In this document: positions 4,493 to 47,223 of the stretch, piece after piece | Layout of the letters: the number at the start of each line of letters is the position of its first letter | Numbering within the stretch: position 1 is the first letter of the stretch | From: Trichosphaerium sp. ATCC 40318 | Taxonomy: Eukaryota > Protista > Tubulinea | DNA length: 64,000 nucleotides | Assembly: GCA_038496445.1 (NCBI GenBank) | Contig: JALMLS010000304.1 | Span: 310,001-374,000 of the forward strand | Direction of reading: 5' to 3' | Notes under the pieces: model-generated | Seen by the model: the letters and a program-made list of their open reading frames with translations, nothing else | Database searches by the model: none | What the model was told of the DNA's origin: nothing | Translations under genes and position numbers: made by a program

Positions 4493-6105
4493 ATGCTGGC
4501 CTGTATTCTCAACATCACAATAAAATTCAACCAAACTCACCCCTGCTGCATACTTCTACGTTACTTACACAGCTGCTTATAAAGTACACTTCCGCAAAAG
4601 CACATATCTCCTTTAACTTTGAACAAAGAAAAGCTATGACTTACCAAGTAAGACCTCGAAAAATCAGTAACCTTTTACACGTTGATGTCTACAATCAGTA
4701 AAACCAAACAAAGGTGTGAAGCACTATGGTAATTTATTAGCACTCTAAACATCCTTTTAGTGCAGGTATAAGCATATTAGACCTCCCAACAGAGATTTTA
4801 GCACATATTTTACGTCAAACAACAAAAGAGAGATTTGCCGCCTGTCAAACATGTCATAGACTTGCTTCCATCATTCACGACGTTATTGGATATGATAACG
4901 TTACAATTTCGACTATTCATCAAGCCAAAGCGCTTGTTAAACACAAGAGCGCTCTACTTCACACGGAAATCAAAATCAGCACACTTTCAGATCCTAAAAG
5001 CATAAATGGCATAGTCAAACTACTTAATGGTGTTCGTAACCTTAGTCTTTCCTGTACCTCAGTTACGGATGATGGTATAAAAGGACTTGTGGGAGTTCAT
5101 ACCATTGACCTTTGTTCTTGTAAGAATATAACAGACGAAGGTATCAAGGTGCTTGCTGGTGTTCATACAATCGACCTTCAAAGTACAAAAGTTACAGATG
5201 ACGGTGTTAAGGCATTGGCTGGTGTTCATACAATTAACCTCAATGGTTGTAAGCAAATAACAGATGAAAGTGTCAAAGCACTTGCAGGTGTTCACAGTAT
5301 AGACCTTGCTTACTGTAAAAACATTACAGCTGATGGTGTTAAAGCACTTTCAGGTGTCCATACTATTACACTTTCTTGTTGCCCTGAGATTACAGATGAG
5401 GGCATCAAGGCACTGTCAGGTGTTCATGAAATTCACCTTAGTTGTTGTTACAAAATTACAGATGATGGTATCAAAGCGCTTGCTGGAGTTCATACTATTA
5501 CATGCAACGCAGCAGTAACTGATGAAGGAGTGAAAGCACTGAAAGGCGTTCATGATATAGATCTTGGTGGCTGCAAAGCTGTTACAGATGAAGGCATCAA
5601 GGCGCTTTCAGGTGTTCAATCTATTGTCTTGTATGATGTTTCAGTAACAGATAGAGGTTTACAAGCACTTTCTGGTGTTCAATTCATTAGTATTGCTTTT
5701 TGTAACGGTATTACAGACAATGGTATAAAAGCTTTGAAGGGTGTTCATACAGCCATACTTTGTAGTTGTACGCAAATTACAGATGACGGAATCAAAGCTT
5801 TGAAGGGTGTTCATACCATTGATCTTTCTGATTGTTGGCAAATTACTGATGAAGGTGTTAAAGCACTTGCAGGAGTACATGAGATTATCCTTTCTAACAC
5901 CAAAGTAACAGATGAAGGCGTCAAAGTACTTACAGGTGTCCATACTATAAACCTTTGCAACACAGCCGTAACTGATGAGGGATTGAAAGCACTGAAAGGT
6001 GTTTATTACATAGACCTTACTGGATGCAAAGCTATCACAGACGAAGGCATTAAGTCACTTTCTGGTACTACTGTCTGTAGATCTCACAGCAATGAATACT
6101 ATTGA
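4493..6105 (+). CDS. F-box / leucine-rich-repeat protein (5' exons uncertain)
   Basis: Open frame 4741-6105 encodes F-box SILDLPTEILAHIL...ACQTCHRL, then ~14 repeats of ITDEGIKALAGVHTIDLxxC. The start at 4493 needs four predicted micro-exons. Confidence 0.85.
5020..6070 (+). repeat. Coding tandem repeat, ~72-75 nt unit (24-25 aa LRR), ~14 copies
   Basis: Recurrent acagatgaaggtgtcaaagcacttgcaggtgttcatac-like units. Confidence 0.9.
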
Positions 6106-39375: not shown

Positions 39376-42300
39376 CTATATTCTATTATTGTTTCGTCTG
39401 TTTCCTCTTCTCCTATCATTGTGGTTTCTAGTACCACGTTGTCTGTACTGAGGTGTTAAGTCGTAGTATTGAGAGTCTTCTTCATCGTGTATTTGGTCTT
39501 GTAGCTGCAGTGTACGTTGGTGTACCTTACGCATCTCCTAAAAAATGAATATCCATTAACAAAAAGCTTCTTTCTCTTTGAGTTTACCTCTTCATCTTCT
39601 TTTGCTTTCTTGGCAGCTGCACGTGCTAGTGGAGAGTCTTGTGGAATAACTATTCTCTTCATTATTGATTGCTTGTTTCCTAAAAGAGGCATAAGCTAAG
39701 TCTCAACGTGCAAGAAAAATACAAACATCCCGCTTACCCTTTTTAGTTAAAACCTTAAAACTGACGTGATCTTTTGGAACTGGTCCTTTGTTTGTGTTCT
39801 TTGTATCGTAAGATCTAAACCTTCCTGATTGAGCATTCATTGCTTTACTAATAGTAGGTCGTTGGACAAGTTTTCTTGACTCAGTACTTTCCTTCATCTA
39901 CAACAAAATTAAGTTGTTTTGAAAGAGAAAAAAATAAGAGGAAAAAACTCAAGTTCTTCTTGGTCGCTTACCATCTCTGCGTATAGTTTGTCAAACTCCT
40001 TTTGGTCTTCTTGTTCTTGTGTTTTCTCTACTACATCGTGTATAACCAAATTCTTTGGAAGTACAACAACCTCAACTTTATTATCTTCGCGATGCTTTTC
40101 AATAGCAGCTTGTGCTATAAAAGCAGCCATATCTCTCTTCTCAGGGTTTCGTACAACGTACTACATCATGTTAATTTTGATAAATGTGCACGTGATTTTT
40201 AAACATAAACACAAAGACGCACTGGTGCAGCACATATAAGATCATAAGACAGTTCAGGACGATCTGGAAAAAGTCTATCTTCCAACATCATTATAAGTTG
40301 ATGTGCCTTATTCCAATCGTCTATACGCCTTAACTTTGGTCTTAAGAACTCAAATGTATCATCAATCATAAACTCTACATCCATTGATCTGGCTTTAGAC
40401 AACAAATAGCGCTAAAGATATAGTTAGAAGATAGATTTTAAACAACAACGAAATTACTGTAATAAGTCAAAGCTCAAAAAAAAGTCTTGCGAAACGTTGG
40501 TTGCCAACAAGAGGTTGTTTTCTCAACAAGATAGATGCATAGACAGTATAAAGCGTTACCTGGAAATAAAGGATAAATCTATCCAGCCTATCCTTGCTAG
40601 CTCCTTTATTGAAGTACTGTCCGCAAGTATCCAAAAGCCTACAAGCTAGGCTACCAAAAAGTATTAGACCTTATTGTCAAATCTATAAGATTAACATACC
40701 GAACTCTAATAGTATCTGCAGGAGGATCAATGACAGCACCATTAAAATCGCTGCCAGGCTCTAAACGGAGAAAAGAAAAAAATGAGAAAACTGAATGTCA
40801 CGTGTCTAAAATAATTAAAAAAAAGTAGACATACCATGGCCCAATGTTATTAATGTATATAAAGTATTGAATATGAGTCCACTATCAACTACACTATACG
40901 TATACAACTCTCCAAGCATAGTAACAGTCATGAGCATCTTTTGGTTTTTAGAATAATCAGGACGTTCAATACCAAGCCTACAAACATCAATAAGAACCAA
41001 CACAATTTCAAACAAGTTTGCGGAAGAAAAAGCAAAACAACCATCCATACCGTATTTGCTCACAAATGGCATCAACGTAAAGTATTGAGAACATTGGATG
41101 ATACTTTGTCAAGCCAGCAACTAATTTTGCAACTAACTTGATATTATCGTATTTGCAGTGACCCAATCTTAGAAGAGAACGAAGAACAAGTCTCTAAATA
41201 GTTCATTAGAACAGCAAGGTAACAATGTCATGGTTTTTTTGTTCAATGACTTCCAAACAAAAAAATCGTTGTTACGCACCTCATGTTCTTTCCAGTTTAG
41301 TTTTCTCAATTTTTTTGCAACAATGGCAGCTGTGGCTTTATTCAAATCATCGTATATTAATTTTCGAATATAACGCTCCATAGGAGGAAGATTTTTTTCT
41401 TTCCTAATTTATTGTTAGTTTGGATCCAAAAAAAAAGTCAAAGTATACTTGATGTTACCTTACTGGTATATCTGGCGGTACACAATGATAGTAAGCGTTT
41501 TCAATAACAGTTTTTAATCTACTATCAAAGCTTTTGGCTTTTTTAAGTCTGATCATACGTTCCAACTAAAACACAAAGTAAATAAGTAACATACCAATAA
41601 TTTTGTTGACTCTTTTCTTATGAATTTTTTTTGATGCTCGTACCAAATGTTTCGTTACTTCATGTGTTTCTGGTTTACGGTATAGATACCGTCCACATAC
41701 CTCAAGCATATGTGCTGCTACTTCAACATTGTGATGAACAAAATCATCAAAACATTTTCGTAACATTTGAAAGGCAGTACTTGTTTCAACCAGGCGAAAC
41801 TTTACAAGCTCTGCCAAAAAATGTACATTCTATAAAGCAGTTAGAATAAAACAACGTAGCGCCCTCTTTGTTGCAGGTAGTAACAGCAAAGAAGAAGAAA
41901 AAAAGTAGAATGAATACAGCACCCTACGTTCCCTGGTCCTCACGGACCCAAGTACTGGCAGGGCCATACCATGCTTATCTTCGCGGTTCGGAAAGAGACA
42001 CGGAGTTTTCATGGTTGTATGGCCGTATCCATCAGTGAGGGCAAGATTTTTGAAAGTGGTTTGGTCGATAAACAAGAATACGATTGATGATTGTCATACC
42101 TTCTTTTTAGTCTCAATGTTGATTTGGTCCTTATTGTATAACAGTCTCCAAAATTCCTTTGTTAATAGTTGTACTAACGGTGATGCGATATCCTTGTAGT
42201 ACTTATTTAAAGTAGCAACAAGTCGAGCACAATAAGGAATGATATCAAGCCTATTCCTCGGAACATTAAACAATGCCTACATCAAAAAAAATCAATTACA

Positions 42301-44857
42301 AAAAATGAAAACACAAAATAAGCATCATACGTTAACTAACTTCTTTCTATGACTCTTTGAACTATGATAACAAAACTGTTCAGAAGCACGATCTATTAAA
42401 TCTCTGTTTGAACTTTGAAGTAATTTATCCAAGTAAGCATTGAAAGGATCATGTAATGATTCCTTCTCTTTCTAATTGAAAAAAATTAACAATAACTATT
42501 AAACACTCTTTCCTATCTTTAAAAAAATAATACGTACTGCTTCTTGTTTATCATTATCGTCAGTACCACTTTTGTCACCAGTTGTTTCACTGTCTTTTCC
42601 TTCTTGTTCAACAGCTTCTTTTTGTTCGCCTTCTCCTTTGTCTATACAAGTGATTAGTTGCCTTTTTGTATCCACAAATGGACTCAACGCACCCTTGCTA
42701 TCACTTTGAGGTTCAGGTTGTTTGTCAGGTACTGAATCTGGAGTCGCAGACTCGGCATCGCCATTTTCTGGCGTTTCTGGTTTCCCTGCTTTTGTTGGTT
42801 TGTCATCATTGTCTGTGTTATCAGTATTATCCCCTTTTTTATCTTTGTCTCCTTCTTCTTCATCAGGATCTTCACCAAGCTCTGATTTTGGTATCACATC
42901 CAGTAACGTAGCAGGAATTTTTCCAGAAAGGGTTGGTAGAATCTCATAAAAAGCACGCTGTTCAGAATCATCCCATATCTCTTCAGTTCTATTTCCATGT
43001 TTCGAAAACTAGACCCAGAAGAACAATTAACAAAAAATCAAAGCCTTTTTATGCGCAACGTACACGTGCAACAACAACGTTCGATTCAGATACACGAGTA
43101 AGTTCCTCTTGCTCAAAAACAGGCATATCCTACATCTTGGTTAGTAACAATACCTAAGAAAAGGCTTACTTTATTTAAGAATTCACTCATAGCCTTCAAG
43201 TTAGTTTCAAAACGATCATACTCTTCTCTCATAGTCTTATACTGATTACGTTGTGCTTCACCCACTTCTTTAATCTTGGCAAGTTCTCTATGCTCTGATT
43301 CTTTGTTACGCAAGTTCTAATATAGAGTGTGAATGATGCATTATAACAAAGCCTTTTCCTGTAAAAAGGATAACATAAGGTTACCTTGTTTTGTCTTATA
43401 AGTCCTCTAGAAGCAAATGCAAAGAACTTTTCAAGAAGAGTAATAAATTCCTTTCTCGCTGAAGCTGAAATAATCTCATCACCTTGAAAAGGTTTCTCAG
43501 GTTCATCACTCTGAGAAAATATTAGCATAAATACTGAGCACTAAAGCTATTATATCATTACCTCTGGTTTACGTTGATGTAGTCCTAGAAGTATAGTAGC
43601 ATGACGAATAAAACTGAGCACCAATAACAAGACATTTGCGATATCTTTCTCCTTCTAATTATAACAAAAAATAAACACGTGAGTGGCAAAGTGTTTCTCG
43701 TACATGTAATCTTTGTATAATTGAGATAATTATAGTATGGTCAGGTATAATACCCACAACAAACATATCAGCTAATAAACGTAGTGTAGAACGACGTTTT
43801 GTCCATTTTGTATCTTTTGAATAAAACGAATCTGTTAAAGCCTTGATAACCTCTCCAGAAAAGTCACTGTATCTTTGATGTAAAAGAGACATTATCTAAA
43901 CAATCACGTGAATTCGGTTACTAAACACACGCAATGAATCAACGTACTTGTATTGCAGCTTCCATATCAGCATTTTTAATCGATATTTGAGCAAAGTCCT
44001 ACAAAGACACGTTAATCACATGTGTAGTTATTACATCATTTTCTTTTTTTTTTGTACCTTGACAAGTTCACCTATGTATCGTTCAAGATTCAACGTTCTG
44101 ATATCCTTTAAAACACTATCCTTGATATCTGACAATGCTTCATGCTGTAGACGACGCCTTAGTTTGCCTGTTTTGATCATACTGGATTGTAGATTAAGAG
44201 ATGACAAGGCTTGACAAGAAAAACGTTAGTCAAACTATTATAAATTTTGTACTTTACCTGGGCGATTTTTGGAGATGTCGTTGTTGACTTGTTTCAATTT
44301 GAGCAGCTCTTGGCGTCGTTGCTCTATTTTACGTCTGGCCTCTTCATCTTCACGCTTACGCGCCTTTGTAGTGTCAACATGGTGCATCTCCAGACATTTT
44401 TTGTGTCACGTACCTCTTGCTCTTTTAGAGCGTTTTCTTCAGCTTCTTTAAGCCGTTGAGCTTCTTGTTCTGCTTTTAGTTTCTTTTGTTCTTCAGCTCG
44501 TTTTTTTTGTTCCTCCTTTTCTTTTTCGCGCAAAGCTTGCACCTCTCGCTGCTTTTTAAACAGTTCTTCGCGTTTTTTGGCCTTTTGAGCTTCCTACATT
44601 GTGTTTAGTTATTTTTTTCATAAACAAATTTTTACATACATTGAGCACAGCGTTCTCTTGTTTTTGCTTCTGCTGATAGCCTCCTCGCTTTGATTTATTG
44701 TTTCGTTGATTTCTTCTTCTACCTCGCCCTCGTCCTCTGCCTCTACCTCTTCCTCTGTTATTACCCTGATTGTTTTTGCCCTTATTTATTTTACTGACGT
44801 TTGATTTAGGTGATGTACCTTGCCAGAATTCTGCCTTTTCGGCGCCTGGTCAGACAT
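39376..44857 (-). CDS. UPF2: Regulator of nonsense transcripts 2 (three MIF4G domains), ~20 introns
   Basis: LNLERYIGELV, LFNVPRNRLDIIPYCARLVATL, DQINIETK, LEVCGRYLYRKPET, MLGELYTYSVVDS, LLDTCGQYF, FKVLTKKGNKQ; stop TAG at 39376-39378. Confidence 0.95.
41898..41904 (-). terminator. Pol III oligo(dT) terminator of the 5S gene
   Basis: T7 run on the minus strand ~7 nt downstream of the 5S 3' end. Confidence 0.75.
41911..42030 (-). rRNA. 5S rRNA gene located inside a UPF2 intron
   Basis: 119-120 nt GGATACGGCCATACAACCATGAAAACTCCGTGTCTCTTTCCGAACCGCGAAGATAAGCATGGTATGGCCCTGCCAGTACTTGGGTCCGTGAGGACCAGGGAACGTAGGGTGCTGTATTCA; helix I GGAUACGGC/GCUGUAUUC, helix II ACCAUG/CAUGGU, loop C CCGAAC, loop E AGUA/GAA, helix IV GGUCC-GUGA-GGACC, helix V GCCCUGC/GUAGGGU. 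Confidence 0.95.
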
Positions 44858-45060
44858 ACGAGTACTATGTCATCAAGTGAACAATTCAACTGAAATTGCA
44901 CTCATGGCTTTTTATTGTAAGGTCAATACAATTCTGTTGCTTGTATCGATCTCTTCACCAGCGCAATGAGCGAGTCATACGACAATGTAGTGTCAGGCAA
45001 ATTGAGCTTTAAAACGTCAAAAAAGTATGTTCCTCACAAATAGAAGCTAATAACTCACCC

Positions 45061-45705: not shown

Positions 45706-47223
<1,518 letters not shown>

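What the first reader, a model, noticed from the sequence alone, without database searches (positions are those of the whole stretch)
41830..42099. Intact 5S rRNA gene nested in sense orientation inside a coding intron of the NMD factor UPF2
Seen: the 270-nt intron between NIETKKK and NVHFLAELVKF (GTATGA at 42099 ... TTTATAG at 41830) is several times longer than the typical intron here. It contains a full 119-120 nt 5S rRNA (42030->41911) whose helices I, II, IV and V pair, with divergent but compensated stems (e.g. GGUCC-GUGA-GGACC). It has box A/box C-like internal promoter segments, an AT-rich element ~25 nt upstream and a T7 terminator. Established: 5S genes are Pol III units, usually in tandem arrays, linked to rDNA or other repeated units, or dispersed intergenically. 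Inference: this lineage may host 5S genes singly inside protein-coding introns. The copy could be transcribed by Pol III within a Pol II unit or released from the intron like a snoRNA, which could couple ribosome biogenesis to UPF2 splicing and output. Compensated pairing argues for a functional gene rather than a SINE or pseudogene.
Basis: partly seen in the sequence, partly recalled or inferred. Interest (0 to 1): 0.9.

Follow-up and report, generated by a model that had tools for sequence, protein, structure and literature searches.

The report
5S ribosome gene inside an intron
In this amoeba a complete gene for the small 5S ribosomal RNA sits inside an intron of the ordinary protein gene UPF2, apparently one of many single copies tucked the same way round into introns, a layout I found no published report of for 5S.

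Summary
Observation confirmed. A full 5S rRNA (41911-42030, minus strand; Rfam 93.7 bits; 38/38 helix pairs canonical) lies sense-wise in a 270-nt UPF2 intron. Contigs from three independent studies show that intron spliced out. The intron position is old: Pelomyxa and two fungi share it at 49-66 nt, so the 5S entered an existing intron. A same-strain run holds other 5S copies with a matching core and a shared -42..-10 upstream block, but different outer flanks. The scan found this before on other DNA: 13 unchecked notes report intronic 5S in this genome (9 of 9 with stated orientation are sense), plus intronic tRNAs, 7SL and U4. UPF2 is therefore probably an incidental host, and the UPF2-specific coupling idea is unsupported. 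Best reading (0.66): a solitary, independently Pol III-transcribed 5S gene of a dispersed family housed in introns. Rival (0.17): snoRNA-like release from spliced introns. The organism is an amoebozoan, probably Trichosphaerium (inferred). Expression from this locus and TFIIIA were not testable. Dispersed 5S genes and intronic tRNA genes are known; I found no report of 5S genes placed systematically, sense-wise, in introns.

The parts
39376..44857 (-). UPF2 host gene (MIF4G-domain NMD factor), about 1235-1240 aa, at least 25 introns; the exact start is uncertain
   Evidence: Spliced model gives one open frame. 15 listed intron joints are seen in contigs. Best homologs are UPF2 proteins of Amoebozoa, plants and fungi.
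42100..42276 (-). UPF2 exon upstream of the host intron (ends ...NIETKKK)
   Evidence: MIF4G profile 41-100; covered by spliced contigs
41830..42099 (-). 270-nt phase-0 GT-AG spliceosomal intron hosting the 5S gene; ancestral intron position
   Evidence: Joint skipping 270 nt in X1, X2, X3. Same position and phase in Pelomyxa (66 nt), Phycomyces (49 nt) and Borealophlyctis (65 nt).
42040..42072 (-). Upstream block -42..-10 shared with a paralogous 5S copy whose -9..-1 and further flank differ; contains TTTCAAAAAT (42055-42046). Candidate upstream promoter element or co-duplicated flank.
   Evidence: X1 record 2 aligns 41909-42072 with differences at 42033-42039 and an unrelated loose end beyond 42072 (reconstruction)
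41911..42030 (-). Complete 5S rRNA gene, sense to UPF2: helices I-V intact, bulged A64 and AA50-51, loop E AGUA/GAA, GUGA tetraloop
41967..41981 (-). Box A-like internal promoter segment (+50..+64), assigned by position only
   Evidence: Sequence plus established type-1 promoter geometry; binding not tested
41934..41951 (-). Box C-like internal promoter segment (+80..+97), assigned by position only
   Evidence: Sequence plus established type-1 promoter geometry; binding not tested
41898..41910 (-). 6-nt 3' trailer plus T7 run (41904-41898), candidate Pol III terminator
   Evidence: Two X1 contigs with other 3' flanks align up to 41898. T-runs are common in these introns.
41840..41844 (-). Branch-point-like CTAAC, 10 nt before the 3' end of the intron
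41644..41829 (-). UPF2 exon downstream of the host intron (begins NVHFLAE...)
   Evidence: MIF4G profile 102-163; covered by spliced contigs

Best explanation
This is a functional, solitary 5S rRNA gene of a dispersed family, copied together with about 40 nt of upstream sequence and its T-run into an old UPF2 intron. It is transcribed on its own by Pol III: TFIIIA/TFIIIC on the internal control region, TFIIIB upstream, termination at T7, trimming of a short 3' trailer. Pol II reads through it in the same direction and the spliceosome removes it from the UPF2 mRNA. The host is incidental: this genome seems to lodge internal-promoter Pol III genes in introns of many genes. Sense orientation is probably selected for, for example against head-on transcription or antisense-5S RNA, or because the T-run suits a 3' splice region. 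Shown: intact structure, spliced host intron, ancestral intron position, paralogs sharing core and near flanks. Inferred: Pol III transcription of this copy, the genome-wide pattern (rests on unchecked notes), and the reason for the sense bias.
For: 38/38 canonical pairs and full length. No listed difference in the core against a same-strain paralog, while flanks diverge. The paralog shares -42..-10, which a copy of mature 5S could not carry. Two other copies align through the T-run to 41898. The orthologous intron is 49-66 nt and 5S-free in relatives. Dispersed functional 5S families are established (Yarrowia 109, S. pombe 30; PMC2566860), and intronic tRNA genes are Pol III-occupied in C. 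elegans (PMC4999229). From my own knowledge: ribosomes need 5S one-to-one, and a small share of weakly expressed housekeeping pre-mRNAs could hardly supply that.
Against: No direct sign that this copy is transcribed: no listed contig carries its own intron flanks, and contigs cannot show RNA ends. There is no TATA, and TFIIIA was not located (no note on it). Independent Pol III genes need no sense bias (C. elegans intronic tRNAs are 56% sense), yet 9/9 other notes that state orientation say sense. A U4 snRNA, normally Pol II-made, is also noted sense in an intron (unchecked).
Confidence: 0.66

Rival explanations
1. The 5S is, at least in part, released from the spliced intron like a snoRNA: Pol II transcription of the host, lariat debranching, 5' and 3' exonucleolytic trimming down to the protein-protected helix I. 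The same route would serve the intronic tRNAs, 7SL and U4.
For: Apparent strict sense orientation: this locus plus 9/9 notes (about 0.001 if unbiased and correct). Sense placement is the hallmark of intron-processed snoRNA copies (PMC1687206). 69 nt and 81 nt of room to the splice sites. Notes of sense-nested 7SL and U4. TFIIIA-independent, processed 5S has precedent in Yarrowia (PMC2566860).
Against: A shared upstream block and a T-run just after the 3' end are what a Pol III unit needs. The flanking stem that might aid processing is no better than chance (P 0.56-0.86). Output from hosts such as UPF2, SIN1 or DPH7 seems far too low for ribosome supply (inference). The orientation counts are unchecked and may be biased by what readers chose to report.
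Confidence: 0.17
2. A recent, silent duplicate or passenger of a mobile element (5S pseudogene, SINE3- or Cassandra-like) sitting harmlessly in an intron, while working 5S comes from an array elsewhere.
For: No locus-specific expression was seen. 5S-derived SINEs and TRIMs exist (PMC10946416). A collapsed or missing tandem array cannot be excluded from one window.
Against: Full length with no broken pair. No target-site duplication, poly(A) tail or element body; only chance-level repeats, and just 95 nt of intron lie outside the unit. Upstream untranscribed sequence is shared with a paralog. No note of a 5S array surfaced in a targeted look-up (weak evidence).
Confidence: 0.13
3. Assembly artefact: a repeat copy was wrongly placed into the intron.
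For: No DNA run spanning the intron was available. The RNA joints confirm the exon junction but not the intron's content.
Against: Clean donor, branch point and acceptor, and unique flanks on both sides. The copy differs from the paralog at -9..-1. The layout is reported at many other loci.
Confidence: 0.04

Closest known systems
Dispersed 5S rRNA gene families (Yarrowia lipolytica, Schizosaccharomyces pombe, Blastobotrys/Trichomonascus; PMC2566860, PMC13130702)
   Same: Single 5S copies outside the rDNA unit and outside tandem arrays, with near-identical cores and differing flanks
   Different: The passages I read describe them as scattered or fused behind tRNA genes and do not place them in introns. 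Here the copy lies inside a short spliced intron, sense to a protein gene, with no tRNA in front (ARAGORN finds none in the window).
Intronic tRNA genes of Caenorhabditis (PMC4999229)
   Same: Internal-promoter Pol III genes nested in introns of Pol II genes, where the host can influence output
   Different: tRNA rather than rRNA. There the intronic share (44%) equals chance and only 56% are sense. Here introns are tiny (median 55 nt) and the reported orientation is uniformly sense.
Intron-encoded snoRNAs and their retroposed copies (PMC1687206, PMC10557570)
   Same: A structured ncRNA in sense orientation in introns of housekeeping genes, moving between hosts
   Different: snoRNAs lack their own promoter and terminator and are released by debranching. 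This unit has a 5S internal control region, a shared upstream block and a T-run, and release has not been shown.
5S-derived mobile elements (SINE3, Cassandra TRIM; PMC10946416)
   Same: 5S-related sequence dispersed through the genome
   Different: No element body, LTR, tail or target-site duplication, and the 5S is complete and fully paired.

Membership tests
5S rRNA (Rfam RF00001) | Full-length match above the gathering score | tested here: met
   93.7 bits vs 38, model 1-120
5S rRNA (Rfam RF00001) | Five helices, loop E motif, conserved bulges | tested here: met
   38/38 canonical pairs; AGUA/GAA loop E; bulges A64 and AA50-51
5S rRNA (Rfam RF00001) | Is the sequence found in ribosomes (mature pool) | not testable with these tools
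   Only contigs were available. A paralog with matching core is present in run X1, but RNA ends and levels cannot be read.
Pol III type-1 5S transcription unit | Internal box A / IE / box C | tested here: inconclusive
   Present by position in an intact 5S, but inseparable from RNA-structure conservation
Pol III type-1 5S transcription unit | Oligo-T terminator just downstream | tested here: met
   T7 6 nt after the 3' end, shared with paralogs; background of T-runs is high
Pol III type-1 5S transcription unit | TFIIIA/TFIIIC/Pol III occupancy and 5'-triphosphate | not testable with these tools
   No such data; no TFIIIA note in the genome
Spliceosomal intron | GT-AG ends, branch point, removed from mRNA | tested here: met
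   Joint in three studies; CTAAC; contiguous MIF4G profile
snoRNA-type intron-released RNA | Sense orientation inside an intron | tested here: met
snoRNA-type intron-released RNA | Flanking processing stem | tested here: not met
   The best flank-to-flank duplex is no better than shuffles
snoRNA-type intron-released RNA | 5'-monophosphate, dependence on splicing and debranching | not testable with these tools
   Needs RNA end chemistry or knock-down
5S-derived SINE / retropseudogene | Target-site duplication, A-rich tail or element body, start at +1 | tested here: not met
   No TSD or tail; upstream -42..-10 shared with a paralog
Introner-type element that creates its own intron | Lineage-specific new intron position | tested here: not met
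   Position shared with Pelomyxa, Phycomyces and Borealophlyctis

The most novel reading that the evidence does not exclude
This amoeba keeps most or all of its 5S genes (and many tRNA, 7SL and U4 genes) sense-wise in introns because mature RNA is produced, wholly or partly, from Pol II pre-mRNA by splicing, debranching and trimming. That would be a ribosomal RNA made by the snoRNA route, possibly without TFIIIA.
Probability: 0.15. Interest if true: 0.92.

Novelty: new variant of a known kind. Interest (0 to 1): 0.62.

Why it matters
5S genes are described as arrays, rDNA-linked, linked to other repeats, tRNA-fused or scattered. A family lodged one by one, always sense, in 200-400-nt introns of housekeeping genes would be an additional arrangement. 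It gives a natural system for two open questions: how Pol II and a heavily used Pol III unit share one template, and whether a classical Pol III RNA can be matured from an intron, which Sagi et al. raise as untested for tRNAs (PMC4999229). The value lies in the genome-wide pattern, not in this UPF2 locus. The retained intron would put a stop at its second codon, so any splicing delay feeds NMD, but that is common for introns and no regulatory link is shown.

Tried and rejected
A flanking stem (GCCCUC/GAGGGC) that closes the 5S in the intron fold looked like a snoRNA-type processing stem. It is no better than shuffles, and the paralog changes part of the 5' arm: rejected. The idea that a 5S-carrying element created the intron was rejected because the position is ancestral. 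TSD or TIR search found only chance repeats. 5S patterns found nothing in JGI metagenomes or prokaryote genomes. The 97 viral 15-mer hits are not 5S. No close relative's genomic DNA was reachable: UPF2 homologs are at most about 60% identical, and a window ORF is not on record. Protein searches did not name the organism directly. The 5S-like variant in run X2, with six differences at depth 4.3, is probably another organism in a mixed sample and was not used. Literature searches for intronic 5S genes returned nothing relevant; the library is open-access only, so absence is not proven.

Full report
Observation. Rfam finds one family in the 64-kb window: 5S rRNA at 41911-42030 on the minus strand, model 1-120, 93.7 bits, E 5.6e-19. 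A permissive rescan adds only chance-level hits. The sequence folds better than all 200 shuffles, z -3.6. Checking the eukaryotic register pair by pair gives 38 of 38 canonical pairs over helices I-V, with the bulged A in helix II, the AA bulge in helix III, the AGUA/GAA loop E and a GNRA loop D. Loop C has 13 nt; from memory, most eukaryotes have 12.

Host gene. A 25-intron model gives an open frame of 1235 aa whose best matches are UPF2 proteins. The two exons around the intron cover adjacent parts of the MIF4G profile. The intron 42099-41830 is 270 nt against a median of 55. Contigs of runs X1, X2 and X3, from three studies, skip exactly these 270 nt with CT..AC ends. The intron is therefore real and spliced, and the 5S is sense to the host, 69 nt from the donor and 81 nt from the acceptor. 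No DNA run spanning the intron was available, so its content rests on the assembly.

Organism. Many top UPF2 homologs are amoebozoan: Phalansterium, Clastostelium, Pelomyxa, Pellita, Pyxidicula, Mastigella. Another scan note calls the genome a marine amoeba. Window GC of about 0.33-0.40 and the intron sizes fit the Trichosphaerium sp. assembly (GC 37.69%, 710 scaffolds, mean intron 75 nt; PMC10521059). This is an inference, not a direct identification. That paper's main text does not contain the terms 5S rRNA, rRNA or tRNA.

Age of the intron. Spliced alignment of five homologous genes shows the same position and phase in Pelomyxa, Phycomyces and Borealophlyctis, with introns of 66, 49 and 65 nt. 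No Rfam hit lies in any of these loci. The 5S unit therefore entered an old intron; it did not create it.

Other copies. Run X1 matches the window's exons with no differences in the listed pieces. It also holds a 274-nt contig that aligns to 41909-42072 with no listed change in the 5S core, five changes at -9..-3, a shared -42..-10 block, and an unrelated flank beyond; two further differences near the contig ends are unlisted. Two more X1 contigs align up to the end of the T-run at 41898 and then continue into other T-rich flanks about 145 nt long. So at least two other copies exist, in different surroundings. Their flanks appear in a run where the other UPF2 introns are spliced out, which fits copies lying in longer transcripts, although DNA carry-over cannot be excluded. 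The shared upstream block cannot come from a copy of mature 5S. It points to DNA-level (or pre-mRNA-level) duplication, or to a selected promoter element. No target-site duplication or tail was found.

Genome-wide pattern (leads, unchecked). Thirteen first-reader notes report 5S genes in introns elsewhere in this genome: CTD phosphatase, eIF4G, SMG7, SIN1, ABCE1, NMD3, CAF-1 p60, DPH7, SNF2, a kinase and three unnamed. All nine that state orientation say sense. Further notes report sense-nested tRNAs, 7SL and U4. Look-ups aimed at antisense, intergenic or arrayed 5S surfaced none. I could not test these. Some may be the same locus, and readers are more likely to flag nested than intergenic copies and to recognise housekeeping hosts. 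If correct, 10 of 10 sense has a chance of about 0.001.

Mechanism. Best reading (0.66): an independent Pol III type-1 unit, with internal control region, upstream block and T7 terminator after a 6-nt trailer, co-directional with the host and spliced away from the mRNA. The T-run alone is weak evidence, since such runs are common in these introns, but it is shared with paralogs. Ribosome supply also argues against low-output hosts as the main source (my inference from general knowledge). Rival (0.17): snoRNA-like release after debranching (pathway: PMC10557570). It is favoured by the sense bias, which is typical of snoRNA copies (PMC1687206) and absent for C. elegans intronic tRNAs, 56% sense (PMC4999229). 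A candidate flanking stem is chance-level. Silent duplicate (0.13) and misassembly (0.04) remain possible. A UPF2-specific link to NMD has no support, given the variety of hosts.

Comparison and novelty. It is a member of the 5S rRNA family by sequence and structure. Membership of Pol III units is likely but not directly tested. It is not a SINE and not an introner. Dispersed and tRNA-fused 5S families (PMC2566860; PMC13130702), 5S-bearing mobile elements (PMC10946416) and intronic Pol III genes are known. Seven searches found no report of 5S genes housed systematically in introns, within an open-access library only. I class it as a new variant of a known kind, interest 0.62, with a 0.15 chance of the far more novel intron-release route.

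Noticed in passing
window 46520-46571 (-): Box C (ATGATGA) ... box D (CTGA) pair in an intron of the upstream PP1 phosphatase gene, with a weak Rfam SNORD47 hit (E 3.3). Possible short intronic C/D snoRNA; fold not significant.
   Followed up: partly
window 40412-40559 (-): Second-longest UPF2 intron (148 nt, RNA-confirmed). No Rfam hit and no significant fold (z 0.67); reason for its length unknown.
   Followed up: partly
window 44780-44860 (-): The UPF2 start is unclear. The ATG at 44857 needs a further intron of about 38 nt to join the main frame, but an X2 contig covers 44639-44847 unspliced.
   Followed up: no
window 41830-42099 (-): The host intron length is a multiple of three and has an in-frame stop at its second codon, so retention gives an NMD substrate.
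   Followed up: partly
window 1-64000: CACGTG occurs 46 times against about 22 expected from 5-mer counts and about 8 from base composition, in line with another scan note on this genome.
   Followed up: partly
window 4741-6105 (+): Intronless F-box plus many LRR repeats, of a type common in amoebae and giant viruses; a Moumouvirus protein is among the hits.
   Followed up: partly
window 41986-41998 (-): Loop C of this 5S has 13 nt, which from memory is one more than in most eukaryotic 5S rRNAs.
   Followed up: no
L005:1-72: In Pelomyxa a metallophosphoesterase gene also lies next to UPF2, but head-to-head and 544 aa long, so probably not the same PP1 neighbour.
   Followed up: no
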